From: Perna viridis
Lineage: Eukaryota
Reading direction: 5' to 3'
Assembly (NCBI GenBank): GCA_037379345.1
Contig: CM074513.1
Coordinates: forward strand, 7,254,001 to 7,318,000
DNA: 64,000 nucleotides
Shown here in pieces: positions 31,825 through 47,700 of this stretch. The notes below the pieces were generated by a model, which had not been told where the DNA came from, ran no database searches, and saw only the letters and a program-made list of their open reading frames with translations. The position numbers and the translations under genes were made by a program. Position 1 is the first letter of the stretch, and every line of letters starts with the position of its first letter.

Positions 31825-34669
31825 AAATTTAATTAAATTAAAATTAACAATTGGAAAAGTTGTTTCTCGTCTTAACCACAAAGTTCATTAAAAAGGATTA
31901 ACGGGAAATGATCAGCTATGATGTCTTACAAGGCATCTTGCAGGTTGAGTGTACCAGGACAATTATAGTATGCATGGACATAAACACCTGTAAATTCTCT
32001 ATAACACATTTTTCACCATTGGAGTTAGAAATAATTGTAATACATGTACAGTTGGTAATTAATTATGAATTACGAATCCCTTTTTGATAGAGTTTTTTTT
32101 CCAAAAATAGGCAAGGTTAGCAATATAATTCTTTGTTTCCATGTGGAAATTTGGGGGTCTCCAGAAGATCTTTCGAATTTTTCAGTATCTACATGGAATT
32201 AAAACCACTACTAACAAGACCTCACAGCCTTTACCCGCTGTGGCAGAGAATCAATGTCTTCTTGTTCTTGTTTTATCCATTTTCTTGTGTAGCCCTCCAC
32301 AGCAACCATAAGGCAACTATAAGAACTTTAAAGTTATAATTCCGATTTATGGAGCGTGTTTCACGGTACTTGAGGCCATTAGAAACGACCTTACGCAGAG
32401 ATTCGTTTTCGATGATGCTTAAATCTCACGTAACGACGTGACCGGAAAGACCATATTTCAAAATATGAAAATAATGTTCTTTTGTTTCCAATAAAGATTT
32501 TGCATTTTATTTTCTGGATGTTGAATATTATTTTCGTAATGTTTGCTATATGTTTACGATTATTTATATTATATTAATGTAAAGTTACCTTTTTGAGCTG
32601 TATTTTGAAAAGGTAGAAAACAGAGGATGCTCCACCTGTTCTGTGTTACCAATTTTTAGTTGCTAATCTACTTTTGTTACTTCATCTGTGTCATATTTTT
32701 TGTTATTTCATGTTCTGTTGTGATTGTTTATTTTCCATGTGTAGTCTTTATCCTTCGGATATATATATTTTGATCCCGGTCGAATCTTGGTTTCCTTTCA
32801 TTACTCTTTGAGTAAACAAATGTGAACGAAATATTCGGCCAATTAGTAGCTTTTGTTTCAGGAAATATGGAGACAAAACTTTAATTTGGTGGAGCAGAAA
32901 GAATGTTACTATTTAAGAAATGAGAGTTTGCAATAGAAAACAGCGTTTAGTTTTGTCTTGAATTATAGTTGAAAGCTTTCCCATCCATTCGATTTTGAGA
33001 TTACGATCACAATAAGACTTTACTGTTTCTAAAGTGTCATTCACTGCAGTTTTTTTGTATTTGTTTTTGTTTTATTTTTAGTTTTTTGTCTTTGCTTTTT
33101 TTGGTTTTTTTTTTGTTGTTTTTTTTTTTTTTTTTGGGGGGGGGGATCAAGGTTTATCATTGATAAGCCACTGTCTAAAAGGTTTATAACCTGGAGACAC
33201 TTGTACAGTCTGTGTATCAAAGCATGCATTAGTAACACTACTGACTAAAATTATGACCGAAATGGCTAATGACCATGCATGCATACTCAAAATGTACATT
33301 AGACAAATAAATGATTTCTACTTATATATGTTCATTTTATTTTCCTTAGTCAAATTTTGAGCATCTGAGCATTAACAGCATATTCACTAAATGTTCACTA
33401 CAGCATATTTTGTCTAACTCAACATACACATGCGTTTTTGTTATGACTTCATAAGTGGGTTAAGATATCCTACATCAATGCAATAATATCGACGAAGACG
33501 TTGCTTGTCTGTCTCAACCGAAAAAGCATCGCAGTAGACATGTTTTTGACTCGCTGACTCACTCAACCAAAAAAAGTCTCGAGATAGCCAATCATTGTCT
33601 AACATAACTAAACACATTTTTAGGTCGATAAAAAATACTGACGCGACACTTGTTACAGTTGTAGTAGACAAAACGTATTTCACACAGGCAGAATGGGCAG
33701 AAAAGGGTTTCTTGCCACTTTTTGTTCCTGTATCATTCATAAAACGACTGTGAATTTTCATATCAGTCATTATTTTGTCTAGCAGTGTATATACAACCTA
33801 AATAGGTTTCAGTTTTAGTTTTAGTACAATACTAGTTAGGAATCGAAAATCAATTGCATTTTCGATTTTATTCTCTGTGTAATCTTTTTGACACAGTCTT
33901 CCGCATTGGAAAAGTTTTCAGTTGTGATGACCCCTACATTTTGGCCTATATACCAGCTGTTCCATCTCAATACCCCTCTCTGTTACCATGGCTACCCTTT
34001 TGGTTAAAGAATAATGTAGAATCTAGTTTTGACATGTAAATAATCAAACAACTAAATTCTTAATTGTACTGAAAGATAATAGTACATGTTGAATATCTTC
34101 AAGAAACTCTTCTGTATGCCTATAATCATTTCCTAGTTTACTGTATATCAATCCGCTCGCTGGTTTATAAAATATTAAAAAGCAAAATACAGTCTGTACA
34201 AAACTTGATCTTGACGTTGATCAAAAATAAGCATCCAATTGATTGTCATTTGTTGTCGGCTTGTTTGGAGACTATAATTCTCTAAATTTTAAATTGAAGC
34301 AGTAGGAAGAAATATGTCAGAAATATACCAGCAAGCTGAAAAAGAAAACAAAAAATGTTTTCTTGATGCGTTAATATTTTTTAATTAATTTTAATGAGCT
34401 AGATTCGAAAACTATAAATTATAAGAATCTTTGCAATTTTCGTTTCCATGGAATACTAACAACATGTACTTACATGTAACACTATGAAATAATTTTTGAT
34501 GAAAATATCTTACCGGACATATCCCGTACTTTACCGATTATTTCTTAGAGTTACCGGATAGTTCCCCGTTTAACGAAAATTATCTACTAAAACCCAACTC
34601 GTACTAACCATTACGCTGACATTCACGGTTTTATATGTATAAACCGGTCATTTTTGAAAACCAATTTAA

Positions 34670-34881
34670 GGAGGTAGAACTAGGGTAAGGGACATAACTC
34701 TTGAAACCAGTGATATGTTTGTATCATATTCAATTTCTCCAAAGCCGATCAAGCTTTCATTTGAAACAGAATGAACCCAGTCCAAGTTACTTTGATGCAT
34801 AAATAAGAGTGATGTAAAATGCTGAATACAAACGTTCCAATGATTTTTAAGAGTCATGTCCCTTACCCTTGGTCTACATCC
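34670..34881. mobile_element. Kolobok-type MITE, second copy (GRL intron 3)
   Basis: TTAA-GGAGGTAGAACTAGGGTAAGGGACATAACTCTT ... AAGAGTCATGTCCCTTACCCTTGGTCTACATCC-TTAA. Confidence 0.8.
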
Positions 34882-36769
34882 TTAAACATCTTCAGAAGAC
34901 CTTTCATATCAATTTCAATATTTTTTTAAATTGTGTAAACTGAACATTTGCCTAAACAGAGCAAATCTCTCTGTTCTGCGTGTTTGCTGGTGAAATTATA
35001 CTTTTAAAGTAAGTTTTTTTTCTAGATTTCCCTTGATTACACTACTAAATGCATTAACCGATATTATGTAATTTTATTGACTAATTGATTCGTTAGTAAA
35101 TAAACATTTGAAAATATTCCCTTTTACACGTTAAATATTGAGATGTTTTAGCGAATCATTGATTGTACACGCTTTTTAACATTGCACATGTAAAGTTTTA
35201 AAATAGACACAAAACAACCTTAAAGATTGTCTCTTTTCCTACATTTTTTCTATCGCTTTGTATTCTCGAGTCACGCCCGTAGCTGGAACGTTTTAGGGGT
35301 TCGGAGTGGGTTATTTGGTCGAAATTTCTCAGACTTAAATAGTGATTAAAGCCTGTGTTTAACAGTTTTTAACGCTTTTCTGTTTCCAATTTGGTGGGGT
35401 CGTAATTTCCCCTTTTTTTCCCTTTTCTGGTATTTGAAGTTTATTGCTATATTCTGGCGAAGAAGGCAAATAAACTTTCAATATCTATTTCTAAACGTGG
35501 TTACATTAAACAACAAGGTTAACCTGCATCGAAATCGCCAATAAAACCCACCCGATCTTCAACGGTCCTATGCCTTGTTCTTTTGGCACAAAACAATGCC
35601 AAGTGAAGTTCATCGAAATCTGTCATCATTCGTTTTATACAACAAATCAAGCTTGAAAGTAATGATTGCTTCGTTCCAAAAGGCCATACGACATTTATTG
35701 AGTAGAAAAGTTACGAAAAAAATTGTCAAGTTTAGATGTTACAGTATTACTTGAACGAAGTTATTTTGTACAATGAAGATACAATGGAACATTTCAGTGG
35801 ATATTTTACATTAAATCAAATGAATGTACTTACGGTTAAAATCAGCTCTTTAGTAACAATAAAAAATCCCATGACAGAAAATCCTATAGGTGATGCGGTT
35901 AATCTCGATAGAAATAGGGTTAGCTGAAATAAAGTAAACAACAGTTGTATTTCAAACCATTAAAGGGACTTTGATTATGCTTGTACACACTGTTTCGCAA
36001 TTAAGATATTTGAATGTATACTACGATCTACGTGTAAATATGTAATGCTTTCAGATAGTAAAATGCCCATTCATCGATCAGAAACCTGTTTTTTTCAGAA
36101 AGTCCTACGTATCATAGTGTTGTTACTGAAATAGTTTGAGTAAAGTAAATACATACATCACCTAACTGAGTAGGAGGAAGCTGTCGTAGTTCAAGGTCGT
36201 ATACAAGGTCAAGAGGGGCGTGAGCCTGTAATTAGAGAGAAAACAAGTAAATGAGAAATATACATAATATGCGATCAAAGTATATGTGCAGTTTGTGTAC
36301 GTGACTGTCATGATGATTAAACTGGGTATTTATTTTAAACTTCATTTTTTAATGTTATACTTTGTCGTTTCTATCTCACGACTGTACAAAGAATCGAGAA
36401 AAAAAAATGAAGCATGAACAATGCGACGATTCAAATGCTTCAAATTACAAATACATGACCAAGACAAAGATGACCTGAAACACACAATGTTGCAAACGAA
36501 TGAAATATCACATGTACAGATACGTTTATTTTATGTACCTTTTTAGAATGAATAAGGCATTGAACTTTGTTTAGTTTATTTCGTTATTTTCATTTCATTC
36601 ACATACCAGTGCAAATTTTTTAATGTCGTTTTAATTTGCATTCTTGCTGTTCGATTTTTATTGTGAATGTTTTTTTTTCTTTAGTATTGTACGGTTATAT
36701 ACTGTACTTCGACTGTTGTCCTTTTGGTGTCCCTGGTATTATTCTGATCCCCAATTTCCTCTCTTTTAT

Positions 36770-36971
36770 ATACGGAAGCCAGTTAGGACAGTTTGAAAAA
36801 AATTGTCGAAATTACGACATCATATGTCATAATAACGATATAGCTTTGTCGAAACTACGATATAGATATACAATGTCGTAATTTCGACACAGCTATTATA
36901 TCGTAGTATGTTGTAATAACGACATATAAATAATTGTTTTTTTCTTCAAGTGGCCATTATCGGCTGCTCTA
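36770..36971. mobile_element. MITE with palindromic TGTCG(A/T)AATT(A/T)CGACA internal repeats (GRL intron 1)
   Basis: Imperfect TIRs TACGGAAGCCAGTTAGGACAGTTTG / CAAGTGGCCATTATCGGCTGCTCTA; about five palindromic units inside. Confidence 0.65.
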
Positions 36972-39900
36972 TTTTCATCTTTGGTTTAGCTTCTTCTTCT
37001 CCCTCTAAGAAACTTGTCTAGCTACATGTAACAATCAAGATCTTACCCAGTATGTCAAGTTGGTACTGAAAAAGGCAATAACCAGTATGATAGAGACTTC
37101 ACAAACAAACCAAAATAAGTTGATGACGAAAGTCAGTGTGTCTAGAGGTTTACCAGATATCAACTGGTACATTATAAACATAGTAATAAAAATGTTTATT
37201 CCGAATACATTCATAATCAGATACTTAAATCCGCCATCTAAAACCTCAACAGCTTTACACAGCTGATGGTGTTTCCTCCTTATGCTTTTGAGACAATCCA
37301 TTAGCATAGGTGTTTGGCCACTGGCCTCGTCTTTCATAGCTTGACTAAATGAAAAATTGAGAGAACGAAACTGTAACGACAATGTTAAACTGATGCAAAT
37401 AAAGAAAAACACTGGCAGTATCCAAACAGCACTTTCAAAAAGGAACGTTGTTATCATTAAAATAGACAGTGGGATGCTTTCGTGATCAAAAGGGTTGACA
37501 ACTGATGCCCTAAATGAATTAGTTTTGTCCATGAATGACAACGCAAAGATACCAATAGTGTTAGCCAATACCAGTGGAACTCCTATAAGCACTGACGACA
37601 TCGAATACGCTTTCAATTTTCCACAATGTGAATTTAGCTTTATTTCCTTAGCTACCCTGTCAGTCATTAATTGATTATACATGTAGACAAATTCTGGTAG
37701 TTGATTATTATTCTCGCACATAATAAACAAAATAATTCCAGTTATTGCACTCTGGATAAGTCATGCACATACAATGACTCTGGAAATAGTTATATCAGAC
37801 ATATAATTCATTCCAACCCAAAACGATGGGATATACCGGACGGCATTCATTATCATAGCCACCATGATGAAAAGATGGTAAAACTTGCCGAAAGTGTTGC
37901 TCGTGTGTTTGCTTCCTCCATTGGTTGCGGACATTTCATCTCTATTAGCGTTGTCAATAATAGCTGCCCTTCTTCTCTCATGATAAATTCCAAATAAAGT
38001 CATACACGAAAAAAGTGGTTTGAAAGCCTTGCATATCGGAAGAAAATATTCAATGAAGTGATCCTCTTTTTCAATGGGTTTCACAAGCGTTTTCATCGTT
38101 ATTAATTTTGATATTTTAACTTGAAATTTAATTTTGTAACCCTTTCGACAAATGTGCTGGATTACACTGCAAGGAAGACTTTTATTAGAAGAGATCGACA
38201 AATATCAATACTATTTCATCAATGCATCCCATATGAATTCTAAGTAATTGCGAACTTTATTACTTGAGTGTTTGGTGTACTAAAGTCATTAATATTTTCA
38301 TAAAACTATGTCATTGATTATTACTTAGTATAAAGTAAATACTGCATTTTCTATAGTTCTTGTTGGTACACATATTGAACATTTTACTTTGTTACTGTCA
38401 CTTTGAAATATCTAGTTATTGGTTGGCTACTGAAAGTGCGTAAGTGTTTAAGGAATTACTGTGATATTTTTTCGGTCTATGAAGAAATAACCTCAATCAC
38501 GTTGTGCACACTAAATAACCAGCATAGCAAGTTATTTTATGCAGGTTATTTTAAAGTGTTCACCACGGGCATTGAGGTTATTTCAAATAGACCGAAAAAC
38601 ATAACAGTCATTCCGTATAATTTAATTTAAGTACCAAAGTTCGAGGAGTAAATCATTAAAAAAAAGTTTGAAGACCTCACAGTCATTACAAAATTTGGTC
38701 TATGAGATGAGAACCGAATTTTTTTATCCAATCAGAAACCGAGTTACTTCTGAAATTAAATTATAAGCTTGTAAACGGTCAAAATCGAATATAAGAATAA
38801 TATAAGTGTACGTGGTTATTATTTAAAACCCCAAAGAAATAATGATTTATTCCTTGTGTATATTTTTAAAAATTGTTAAAATTTTGTCGAGTAATTCAAG
38901 CTTAATTATGATCACCAATATGTATTATCTATGTAGAGGTTGTAGTTATGTGCCAATGGAATAAAAAGGCGCTCTGCCTGACATTTACAACGACCTGTGT
39001 TTAGTGTTTTAGTTATATTGACCATCTATCCACTTATCTGATTAAAGCTTTATTCGTCCTATCTTGTCAGCATTTCAGTAATTTCTGATATAATTACAAA
39101 TACAATTATCAAAATATTTACAGAAGTTAAAATTATTCTGCAATTATATGAATTACACCATTACCGGCAAATTCAATAATCTCGGTTTATAACTGATTTG
39201 TTCTCGGTTGTGGGTTCAGTAAATGGAAAACTGACCTAAATAAAAGCTTGAATTGAAAAAATTTATATGTTAATATTTAATCGTTTATTTCAGTTTTCTT
39301 TCTGATTATTTTCCCGAAGCATTGTACATAGGTGATCAAGTAATTATCATTTTTTTTATTCTGGGGTAAAAAACTAACTTACATGTAAATTAATTAGCCG
39401 CAAAATTGTAAAAACTGTAAAATAAAATATAAATTGGAATTGTAATATTTAAACATTTATTTGTTTTGAAATTTTATTTTAGTCTTGTTTTTTAAAGCTT
39501 GGATGAATGGTACATTGTATAATCAAGTAGTTATAATGTATTTTGATCTTTGATCTTCTCGGAGTGTCTTCCTCGAATGCCAACATTTTATATGTTACCT
39601 ATTCTTTGAAACATGATACGTTTCGTTGATGCTGAGCGTGCCCTGTTAATGGCGGACGATTTCCATTGCTTCAACATTTCATCACGATAAATGTAGGTAT
39701 TCTGACCAATATGGTTTGAAAAACAAATTAAAATATCCCACATCAAGTTGTCTCCGGACTTTTTCAATGTTTTGTTTTGATCAATACCTCGACATTCGAG
39801 ACTTTAATCTTATCAAATTTTCAACCTGGTCCCACCTTCGAAGGCGTACTTCTCTACTCATTAAAATTCAAACTCTTTTTCCAAACCCGATCAATCGTCA

Positions 39901-44758: not shown

Positions 44759-47700
44759 ATGATGTTTATTGCGATAGTGAAATTGTTTGTGTTAGTTTTT
44801 ATAAGTGGAGTCAGTTCTAATATTGGTAAGTGTATTTTTTTTATAGTATATTGAGAATAATTTAAAGATGCAATTTATAACACAGTTACACGTTGCAAAT
44901 GTCCACTTTCTACAATGTGCAACTCGGAGATTGAAACATGTATCACATATACATGTACATTTGTATGTATAACTATACTAAAGCATTTTTAGTTAGCTGG
45001 CTAGATCACGCAATATTATTCTAATAATTATTTCTTATCTAATACAAAATATGGAATAGTCTTGTAACTGACCAACGATTTTTTTTAATTTCCGAGATAG
45101 AGTTGTATGTCTCGAGCTTCACATCATACAGATTGCAAATTAGTTGTCTTCGTATTTTGTTTCAAGAGTATGTCATGCTGTCAATTGAAACAACGAAATT
45201 GCAACTTTTAACTTTATAGACAACCAATATTTAAAAAAAAAACTGAAAATAAAAAAAAAAAAAAAAATACAAAACGCAAACTATTTGTTTTTAACAGTGA
45301 TAAAAGTGTCTGTCCTTCACGTTCAATTTACTTTTAATTTGCATTGTACATGATAAAGTGTATGGAAGATAATATGGAGCCAAAAAAAGAAATATCCGTC
45401 TCATATTCAAAGTAGGAGGTTGCTCCTAATCTGGAGATTATTCAATGACTGTATAATTATAAAGCTGACTGAAACATATTAGGGGACATCACCCCCCCCC
45501 CCCCCGTTCTCAAGTTCAAAGTACACTCCATGTTCTGGGTGAAGTCCCAAGTACAATTTTACTTTTTGGTAAGGTACAAAGAACTTTGACTTGTGTGTCT
45601 ATGTCTAAAGTACACTCTAATAATGATCAAAATTCCTAAGTCCAAAAAGGGGGGTGTGTATAACGTTTATATATACACTTGTACCATAATTTATGGATCC
45701 GCCCCTGCCATATATAACTCTGGTAGTTGAAGTAAGTCCCTATTAGGGTAATATCTGGTAGGGGTGGATCCATAAATTATAATGGGGTGGGTCCGCATTC
45801 AAGCTGTCATTTGACAATTTTTGTCCATATTACACACAATATTTACAAACAAAAGTGTGATATGAATTACCGGAACCCTCTGGTTCCGCCGTTATTGTCG
45901 TATTGATATTAATATTGAAGGAAAGTTCAAATGTGATCATTCTGTTCCTTCGTGGGCAGTGTCAGCTTTAGACTTGCTTTTACATACATGTACATGTATA
46001 TACACTAAATTAGATTTCCTTTAGAGTTTTTACTTGACGACCCATAAAAAAAGTACGATGTTCATATTTTGCAGGGTATTTTTGGCATATCACAGACATC
46101 CATTGGGATTCAACTTACATGCAAGAAGGACGATCTTGTCAAGGAGCAGTCGAGGACCAAGATTCGGTGGGAAGTCATGGTATTTTTGGTGATTATAACT
46201 GCGATTCACCATGGCGACTGGTATACTCAATGGTAGAGGGCATACGAGATTTGAAGTCAGACCCAGACTTCGTTATATGGACAGGGTACATTTTATAAAT
46301 ATAACTATGCAAGGGGGTAGGTAGGCAAAGGCGAGATGGGGTGCTTTCTCCGTAAAATGTAGTTGAATCAGTAAAACAGGAAAAGAAAAGGATAAATCAA
46401 TTTTAGAATCATGTTAACATATTCACATGTAGAGAAACATCTTTAAACATGGTACATTCATTTAGAAGGGCAAACAATTAGGAATGGCTCTCAAGATGTT
46501 TTGCCATGCTTGGCTGGGCAATTAAGCTTTCAAATTGCCTTTATGACTTCAAATCTTAGATCCGCGTCTTAAAGGTACAGTAATATTCAAAAGTCACCTC
46601 CCAAGCCAGAGACTGGGGATCATTTTTTTTTATTTAAATCAATCCTTTCTGGTTAATTCTAGTAGAATTCCCAATGCCATGAATGCAATGCACAAAATGT
46701 GAGAACAACATAATAATACTATCTGGTAAACAAATGTAGCTTTTATGGGGTTAAAAGTATCTCTTTTTTTGCTGATTAAGCAAATTTTATATTTCCAGGG
46801 ACACCGTTCCAGACTTTAACGAAGAATACCTGAAACTGAATGTTATCGATAATATCCTTGGAAACGTAACGTATTTAATTAAGGAAACCATATCCGGAAT
46901 TCCAGTGTTCCCGACAATGGGACATCGTGATTTCAGCTTCACCGTTCAGCTTCCAGTATACAATGATACTTTTGAGAAATGGAAAAGTTGGATCAGTGAC
47001 CTGAATGCAAAAACGTTTACTAAGGGTTTGTATTAGGAAATTTATTTATACGTTGTTCCTTTTTAGCTCACCTGGCGGAAAGGTCATGTGAGCGATTGCC
47101 TTCACAATGTGTCCGTCGTCGTCTTTGTCCGTAAACATTTTCAAACATCTTCTCCTCTAAAACTACACAATAGATTGTAACCAAATTTTGCATGAATGTT
47201 CCTTGGGGTATTTTCAACAATCCTTGTGTGGGGATTGTTGATCTGGCAAAAACATGGCTACCGTTACTAAAAATAGACCATAGGGGTCAAATTGTAGAAT
47301 TATGCAAATAACTCAAAAACAGTTAGGTTTTATTAAATAAAATCTGGTAGGGGTAAAATTGTTCAGCATGATGGGATGGATCTATGCCGAAATTTTCAGA
47401 AAGATCAGTTGACGAATGAATGAGTTATGAGTCCTGAAATGGATTTTTTCCCGAATTTTACATTTCCAACTTAGAAAATCTTCTTCTCTAAAACTACAGG
47501 ATGAATTAAAACAAAACTTTGCTTGAATTGTGTGTAAAATATGTTAACCATTCTATGTGTGGGGATTTCTGATCTTGCGAAAAATAAGGCCACCGTTAGT
47601 AAAAATGGACCATATGGATCAAATTGAAGAATTATGCAAATAACTTAAAAACGGTTTAATTTTGCTAAAATCCGGTAGGGATAAAATTGTTCAGGATAGG

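What the first reader, a model, noticed from the sequence alone, without database searches (positions are those of the whole stretch)
37755..37770. Chemoreceptor with one TGA-C stop in an otherwise intact gene: candidate mollusc pseudo-pseudogene
Seen: the GRL gene has a single lesion (GCA TGA CTT ATC CAG, codon 112). The roughly 308 downstream codons, three phase-0 introns with good splice sites and the TYFFLLLQF motif are all intact, and a weak TCCAG/CTGGA hairpin begins about 5 nt after the stop. Established: UGA-C is the leakiest stop context, and readthrough rescues a premature stop in the Drosophila sechellia receptor Ir75a. Inference: TGG(Trp) to TGA, giving either a readthrough-rescued receptor or a very recent or polymorphic null allele.
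Basis: partly seen in the sequence, partly recalled or inferred. Interest (0 to 1): 0.75.

Follow-up and report, generated by a model that had tools for sequence, protein, structure and literature searches.

The report
Reference-only stop in a taste-receptor-like gene
The assembly carries one premature stop in an otherwise intact chemoreceptor gene, but three other samples of the same species read a normal tryptophan codon there, so this is an ordinary rare null allele (or a base error), not a gene rescued by stop-codon readthrough.

Summary
A four-exon, minus-strand GR-like (7tm_7) chemoreceptor gene at 34282-38096 has one in-frame TGA at codon 112 (37763-37761). The 308 codons after it are open, and all three introns are GT..AG and phase 0.

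The stop is not a property of the species. Contigs of three other samples (X3, X4, X11) all read C at + strand 37761, which gives TGG (Trp). A public 353-aa ORF, P0001, seen on 3 contigs, is exon 1 with W112. Trp fills this column in 87 of 107 aligned homologue stretches.

The assembly differs from both X3 and X4 at only 4 letters in about 3.4 kb. The stop is one of those four, which fits a natural haplotype difference.

Best reading: a young, rare or segregating nonsense allele (W112*, inside a transmembrane helix) of a working gene, caught in the sequenced animal.

A fixed, readthrough-rescued pseudo-pseudogene is not supported. The UGA-CUU context is leaky, but only at the percent level in mammalian cells. 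The hairpin is no better than chance (z -1.09).

The parts
37047..38096 (-). Exon 1 of the GR-like receptor gene: 350 codons, from ATG at 38096 to the donor after TGG at 37047.
   Evidence: The post-stop piece hits Pfam 7tm_7 at E 1.7e-7, 31.3 bits against a cut-off of 26.6. The public ORF P0001 is identical except for W at 112. The AF2 model has pLDDT 84.9, and its top 21 PDB matches are all insect OR/GR/Orco chains.
37761..37763 (-). In-frame TGA at codon 112. The variable base is 37761: + strand T in the assembly, C in the other samples, giving minus-strand TGG (Trp).
   Evidence: In one search, X3 read C at depth 6.41 of 6.41, X4 at 64.3 of 64.3 and X11 at 2.7 of 2.7. The column is Trp in 87 of 107 aligned homologue stretches. 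It lies in model helix 100-128 and in the most hydrophobic 19-mer, 107-125.
37737..37756 (-). A 5-bp TCCAG/CTGGA stem with a 10-nt loop, starting at the fifth base after the stop.
   Evidence: The stem is present in the minimum-energy fold, but the stretch has z -1.09 and 28 of 200 shuffles fold as well. It is at chance level.
36157..36225 (-). Exon 2: 23 codons (AHAPLDLVYDLELRQLPPTQLGD), phase 0 on both sides.
   Evidence: It aligns to P0048 residues 323-344 and P0032 residues 332-352. An X11 contig ends exactly at 36157.
35834..35923 (-). Exon 3: 30 codons (LTLFLSRLTASPIGFSVMGFFIVTKELILT).
   Evidence: It is 70% identical to P0032 residues 354-383 and P0048 residues 346-375. It gives a weak 7tm_7 match to profile positions 323-351.
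34282..34335 (-). Exon 4: 17 codons plus TAG, carrying the TM7 motif TYFFLLLQF.
   Evidence: It is 82% identical to the C-terminus of P0018 and 76% to that of P0048.

Best explanation
The locus is a working, low-expressed gene for a gustatory-receptor-like (GRL, 7tm_7) ligand-gated channel subunit. In the species the codon is TGG (Trp112), a family-conserved tryptophan in a transmembrane helix. The haplotype in the assembly carries a single G-to-A transition (TGG to TGA) that truncates the protein after about two and a half helices. The truncated product lacks the helices that in solved insect GR/OR channels form the ligand pocket, the anchor domain and the pore. The allele is therefore a young, rare or segregating null (at best a strong hypomorph), that is, a 'segregating pseudogene'. 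Its youth explains why everything downstream is still intact. Shown: the stop in the assembly, TGG in three other samples, conservation of Trp, the gene model and the fold. Inferred: that the T at 37761 is a true allele of the sequenced animal rather than a consensus error, and that the truncated product is non-functional.
For:: at 37761 the contigs of X3, X4 (both spanning introns, so DNA) and X11 all read C, with no T-bearing contig. The X3 contig covering 36867-38200 differs from the assembly at that one letter only. The assembly differs from both X3 and X4 at 4 places in about 3.4 kb (34921, 35242, 35757, 37761). That density (about 0.1%) is typical of natural haplotype differences and far above what I recall as the substitution-error rate of a 46-contig assembly (recalled, not tested); the public ORF P0001 (Logan, 3 contigs) is exon 1 with W112; the column is W in 87, F in 10, Y in 4, T in 4, S in 1 and L in 1 of 107 aligned stretches; the only other exonic difference (37083, X4) is synonymous (L338), and exons 2-4 are collinear with full-length homologues. 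GR/OR fold, with residue 112 inside helix 100-128. The start of the abstract of PMC2043052 describes olfactory receptor loci with both functional and non-functional alleles as 'segregating pseudogenes'.
Against: The TGA allele was seen only in the assembly. The truncated ORFs expected from a TGA allele are absent from the public protein collection. The exact 111-aa and 228-aa ORFs are not held, and no protein of 61-194 aa shares words with the N-terminal piece. This is weak evidence, because the collection may not include the source animal and gene callers may pick other starts. Logan contigs drop minor variants, so heterozygosity in X3, X4 or X11 cannot be excluded, and no allele frequency can be given.
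Confidence: 0.72

Rival explanations
1. The stop is a base error in the assembly consensus. The sequenced animal, like the others, has TGG, and the stop does not exist in nature.
For: The TGA is seen nowhere but in the assembly: 0 of 3 other samples, and no truncated ORFs in the public protein collection. The X3 contig is identical to the assembly over 1334 bases except at this one letter.
Against: Three further assembly-specific letters (34921, 35242, 35757) lie in the neighbouring introns against both X3 and X4. The assembly therefore represents a distinct haplotype at about 0.1% divergence. Four substitution errors in 3.4 kb would imply a very poor consensus. A transition is also the commonest natural mutation type.
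Confidence: 0.17
2. The TGA allele is real and remains functional: this is the reader's pseudo-pseudogene. UGA-C readthrough in sensory neurons yields enough full-length receptor, with Trp, Arg or Cys inserted.
For: The context is UGA CUU AUC. Passages of PMC5829715 call UGACUU a weak stop signal, with 0.3-4.4% readthrough in COS-7 cells depending on positions +7 to +9. Passages of PMC7244557 report that a premature stop in D. sechellia Ir75a is read through in olfactory neurons. The downstream frame is intact.
Against: The stop is not fixed: 3 of 3 other samples have TGG. Downstream intactness is therefore explained by youth and needs no selection on a PTC-bearing gene. Percent-level readthrough is far from rescue. 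The hairpin is at chance level. No read from a TGA transcript was seen: X19 raw RNA has zero depth over the codon, and X11 reads TGG.
Confidence: 0.05
3. The UGA is recoded by other means: selenocysteine insertion, a non-standard code, or A-to-I editing of UGA to UGG in the mRNA.
For: UGA is the Sec codon, and editing of its A would restore Trp. X11, guessed to be RNA, reads G at the site.
Against: 0 of 107 homologue stretches have Cys or Sec at the column. X3 and X4 contigs span introns and so are DNA, and they carry G in the genome, so no editing is needed to explain X11. No DNA/RNA pair from one animal is available. The local structure is not significant.
Confidence: 0.01

Closest known systems
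Segregating pseudogenes of chemoreceptor families (for example human olfactory receptor loci with both intact and disrupted alleles; PMC2043052, start of abstract seen)
   Same: A single nonsense change sits in an otherwise intact receptor gene, and intact alleles are present in other individuals of the species.
   Different: The receptor family differs (GR-like 7TM channel, not a GPCR) and so does the phylum. Here the disrupted allele is documented only by one assembly, and no frequency is known.
Ir75a pseudo-pseudogene of Drosophila sechellia (Prieto-Godino et al. 2016; known to me only through the passage of PMC7244557 and from recall)
   Same: A chemosensory receptor gene has one premature stop and an intact downstream frame, and the stop context is leaky (UGA-C).
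   Different: As I recall (not checked in any call), the Ir75a stop is fixed in the species, and function was shown experimentally. Here 3 of 3 other samples have the sense codon, and no readthrough evidence exists. The receptor family also differs (ionotropic glutamate-receptor-like versus GR-like).
Animal GR-like (GRL) receptors / insect GR-OR superfamily (Pfam 7tm_7; structures such as BmGr9 8vc2, Gr43a 8zdz, Orco 6c70)
   Same: Pfam 7tm_7 hit, TM7 motif TYFFLLLQF and three short phase-0 3' exons. The predicted fold matches insect GR/OR/Orco chains at TM 0.56-0.67, and these are all of the top 21 hits.
   Different: Sequence identity to solved insect receptors is 10-15%. The nearest public relatives are 50% identical over 122 aa (P0002), then 31% or less. 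Ligand and expression site are unknown.

Membership tests
GR-like (GRL) / 7tm_7 chemoreceptor superfamily | Significant match to the family profile | tested here: met
   The post-stop exon-1 piece hits PF08395 at E 1.7e-7, 31.3 bits (cut-off 26.6). Exon 3 gives a weak match to the profile's end. Against: the whole 353-aa ORF P0001 returned no family at E <= 0.01, although 5 of the 9 homologues scanned in the same call hit 7tm_7 or Trehalose_recp. Atlas feature search: the best hits are 7tm_7 clusters, scores 0.94-0.95.
GR-like (GRL) / 7tm_7 chemoreceptor superfamily | TM7 motif (TYhhhhhQF as I recall it; 'a motif in TM7' in PMC7746228) | tested here: met
   Exon 4 encodes LAGIFLTYFFLLLQFKI, matching the C-termini of P0018, P0048 and P0032.
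GR-like (GRL) / 7tm_7 chemoreceptor superfamily | [quoted passage not shown] | tested here: inconclusive
   Three phase-0 GT..AG introns split the last 70 codons. Their positions were not compared with gene structures of other animal GRLs, because only proteins of relatives were available.
GR-like (GRL) / 7tm_7 chemoreceptor superfamily | GR/OR transmembrane fold | tested here: met
   The AF2 model of P0001 has pLDDT 84.9 and pTM 0.84. Foldseek's top 21 PDB chains are all insect OR, GR or Orco, with prob 1.00 and TM 0.56-0.67. Only exon 1 (helices up to S6) was modelled. The joined four-exon protein was not built, by rule.
Pseudo-pseudogene (readthrough-rescued receptor, Ir75a type) | Premature stop fixed in the species or population | tested here: not met
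   X3, X4 and X11 all read TGG. The public ORF P0001 has W112.
Pseudo-pseudogene (readthrough-rescued receptor, Ir75a type) | Full-length functional protein made from the stop-bearing mRNA | not testable with these tools
   No ribosome profiling, proteomics or reporter data. X19 raw RNA reads have zero depth over the codon.
Pseudo-pseudogene (readthrough-rescued receptor, Ir75a type) | Purifying selection on the sequence downstream of the stop since it arose | not testable with these tools
   No orthologue closer than 50% identity over 122 aa. Only one other exonic polymorphism was seen, and it is synonymous.
Segregating pseudogene (polymorphic null allele) | Intact allele present in the species | tested here: met
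   TGG in 3 of 3 other samples from 3 studies. P0001 is on 3 Logan contigs.
Segregating pseudogene (polymorphic null allele) | Disrupted allele present in real individuals (not a consensus artefact) | tested here: inconclusive
   Seen only in the assembly. Indirect support: three linked assembly-specific intron letters.

The most novel reading that the evidence does not exclude
The TGA allele is real, segregates in the population and is not a null. In chemosensory neurons the leaky UGA-CUU stop is read through (or its A is edited to I), restoring Trp112 and a working channel. That would be a polymorphic pseudo-pseudogene caught at birth, and the first in a GR-like receptor and outside insects.
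Probability: 0.04. Interest if true: 0.7.

Novelty: new member of a known kind. Interest (0 to 1): 0.15.

Why it matters
As it stands, this is a caution for annotation. The reference would label a functional GR-like receptor gene as a pseudogene, or truncate its model, because of one assembly-specific letter. The intact allele (TGG) is what other animals carry.

If the nonsense allele is confirmed in the sequenced animal, it is a natural knockout of a mollusc-type GRL. That could be used to look for a chemosensory phenotype and to measure nonsense-mediated decay and basal UGA-C readthrough in such an animal. It does not open the question of pseudo-pseudogenes in molluscs, because the defining feature, a fixed stop under continued constraint, is absent.

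Tried and rejected
Paralogues and orthologues for a dN/dS test led nowhere. There is no paralogue in the window (tblastn). Only the locus itself was found in the genome with the protein. The profile A1 found 3 places: the locus itself, one intact on C4, and one with a TAA on C1. The word-indexed search found only P0001. The exhaustive search gave 138 proteins at E <= 0.001, but the nearest are 50% identical over 122 aa and then 31% or less. That is too distant for dN/dS, so the test was dropped.

Looking for the TGA allele elsewhere also led nowhere. Exact look-up of the truncated ORFs found neither in the collection. The N-terminal piece found no protein of 61-194 aa. A 46-base exact pattern next to the codon gave 0 matches in metagenome contigs.

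Other readings were rejected. Selenocysteine or an alternative code is ruled out by the column having no Cys and by other genomes having TGG. A functional hairpin is rejected at z -1.09.

Two literature searches on GRLs in molluscs gave only general hits. One search listed 5 of the 6 papers that matched. The listing was irrelevant. I did not search for this gene by name and I make no claim about what is in print on it. The phylum 'mollusc' was not tested by any search: the Atlas taxa were mostly arthropod clusters. Earlier scan notes held nothing on this locus. Supplementary files of papers were not opened and may hold GRL gene lists that bear on family size.

Full report
**What is in the sequence**

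The finding lies on the minus strand. Reading 38096 downwards, an ATG opens a frame of 350 codons that ends at a GT donor after TGG at 37047. Its only interruption is TGA at 37763-37761, codon 112, in the context GCA TGA CTT ATC CAG.

Three short exons follow: 36225-36157 (23 codons), 35923-35834 (30 codons) and 34335-34282 (17 codons plus TAG). Each is bounded by AG and GT and each has a length divisible by three, so all three introns are phase 0.

Exons 2, 3 and 4 align one after the other, without overlap or gap, to the C-terminal 70 residues of full-length relatives. On P0048 they cover 323-344, 346-375 and 376-392 of 393. On P0032 they cover 332-352, 354-383 and 384-400 of 401. By rule I searched the exons separately and did not build, search or fold the joined protein.

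**What the gene is**

- The post-stop part of exon 1 matches Pfam 7tm_7 above the curated cut-off (E 1.7e-7, 31.3 bits against 26.6). Exon 3 weakly matches the end of the same profile. The 111-aa pre-stop piece matches nothing.
- One result goes against this. The whole exon-1 ORF from public data (P0001) gave no Pfam family at E <= 0.01, although 5 of the 9 homologues scanned in the same call hit 7tm_7 or Trehalose_recp.
- An AlphaFold2 model of P0001, built with a 20-row alignment, has mean pLDDT 84.9 and pTM 0.84.
- The 21 best Foldseek matches in the PDB are all insect odorant receptors, gustatory receptors or Orco, with probability 1.00 and TM-scores 0.56-0.67. The next hits drop to TM about 0.2.
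- The Atlas feature search also lands on 7tm_7 clusters.
[quoted passage not shown] The first mark is met. The second is met in form, but intron positions were not compared.

The gene is a lone member of its lineage here. There is no paralogue in the window, and a family profile finds only three places in the 723-Mb assembly. I did not test that the animal is a mollusc.

**The decisive result**

I laid contigs of three other samples, and raw RNA reads of a fourth, on 34200-38200. At + strand 37761 the window has T. Every contig of the three samples has C there: X3 at depth 6.41 of 6.41, X4 at 64.3 of 64.3 and X11 at 2.7 of 2.7. On the coding strand that is TGG, tryptophan.

X3 and X4 contigs run through introns (X4: one contig over 34840-38200), so they are genomic DNA. 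The X3 contig over 36867-38200 differs from the assembly at this one letter only.

The public protein collection supports the same reading. It holds a 353-aa ORF, P0001, on three Logan contigs, which is exon 1 with W at 112. The truncated ORFs that a TGA allele would give are not held.

Among 137 homologues, 107 aligned stretches cover this column. They carry W 87 times, F 10, Y 4, T 4, S 1 and L 1. The T and S rows come from one repetitive protein, P0014.

The codon is therefore ancestrally and currently Trp in the species. The assembly carries a G-to-A transition at its third base. The site is not a CpG.

**Real allele or consensus error**

I could not settle this. Reads were laid on X3, X4, X11 and X19 and not to the likely source sample (X1/X2/X7).

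One piece of indirect evidence favours a real allele. Against both X3 and X4 the assembly has four private letters in about 3.4 kb: 34921, 35242, 35757 and 37761. That is a haplotype difference of about 0.1%. Four consensus substitution errors in that span would be unusual for a 46-contig assembly. That last statement rests on my general knowledge of assembly error rates, not on a test.

About 4% of all possible single-base changes in exon 1 create a stop (129 of 3141). This fraction is the same for mutations and for errors, so it does not discriminate. I put a real allele at roughly 0.8 (0.72 as a null or strong hypomorph) and a base error at about 0.17.

**Consequence of the stop**

Residue 112 sits in model helix 100-128 and in the most hydrophobic 19-mer of the protein, 107-125. 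The truncated product would keep the N-terminal helices and half of this helix. It would lose the remaining helices, including the TM7 segment encoded by exons 3-4. From established knowledge of insect GR/OR channel structures, those parts form the pore and the tetramer anchor, so a null is the expected outcome (inference).

The stop lies upstream of three introns, so the mRNA is a plausible target of nonsense-mediated decay (inference, not tested).

**Expression**

X11 is only guessed to be RNA. It holds low-depth contigs over 37315-37644 and 37706-37913 (exon 1, reading TGG) and over 36157-36327. The last contig ends exactly at the exon-2 donor but extends 102 nt into intron 1. X11 also shows depth over the exon-3 bin. 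It shows almost nothing over the rest of the introns apart from repeats, and nothing over exon 4. That pattern fits weak transcription of the intact allele but does not prove it.

X19 is raw stranded RNA reads, about 19% of the run read. It gives depth 1.8 over 37952-38085 with the first mate on +, which fits a minus-strand RNA. It gives zero depth over the stop codon. Nothing can be said about mRNA from the TGA allele.

**Readthrough**

Passages of PMC5829715 single out UGACNN as the leaky series and use UGACUU, the hexamer found here, as their weak signal. Readthrough was 0.3-4.4% in COS-7 cells, depending on positions +7 to +9. Passages of PMC7244557 summarise the Ir75a case.

Percent-level leakage is not rescue. 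The proposed hairpin is no more stable than shuffled sequence (z -1.09; 28 of 200 shuffles fold as well). The argument from an intact downstream frame also loses its force once the stop is known to be absent from other animals. A mutation this young has had no time to collect further lesions.

**Verdict**

The pseudo-pseudogene reading fails the test of fixation.

The feature is an ordinary kind of thing, a nonsense allele of a chemoreceptor gene present in one reference, comparable to the 'segregating pseudogenes' of olfactory receptor families (start of the abstract of PMC2043052). Alternatively it is a base error. Interest is low. The practical value is that the gene should be annotated as functional, with a reference-specific stop.

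Noticed in passing
window 34665-34886 (intron 3 of the gene): A 222-bp element with 42-nt terminal inverted repeats (88% complementary), looking like a MITE. Summed contig depth reaches 10^5-10^6 in DNA runs, against 8 and 64 for the flanks. It is also abundant in the raw RNA run X19 on both strands, with many rearranged joints.
   Followed up: partly
window 36804-36889 (intron 1): An inverted repeat of 25-nt arms (88% complementary, 36 nt apart). The bin 36746-36879 has 2-3 times the flanking depth in X3 and X4, so it is a moderately repeated small palindromic element.
   Followed up: partly
window 36157-36327: An X11 contig (guessed RNA) ends exactly at the exon-2 donor but runs 102 nt upstream of the predicted exon-2 acceptor. 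The in-frame extension contains a stop. This may be intron retention, unspliced RNA or DNA carry-over.
   Followed up: no
G000:C1:28449340-28450299 and G000:C4:12522736-12523692: These are the only two other places in the assembly matched by the GRL profile. The C4 copy is open over 358 aa. The C1 copy has one in-frame TAA.
   Followed up: no
window 33090-33165: A long C-run followed by an A-rich low-complexity tract, downstream of the gene on the minus strand.
   Followed up: no
window 46799-46945: An earlier scan note (s1-768221) flags an SMPDL3 paralogue with altered active-site motifs in this window. It is unrelated to this finding and I did not examine it.
   Followed up: no
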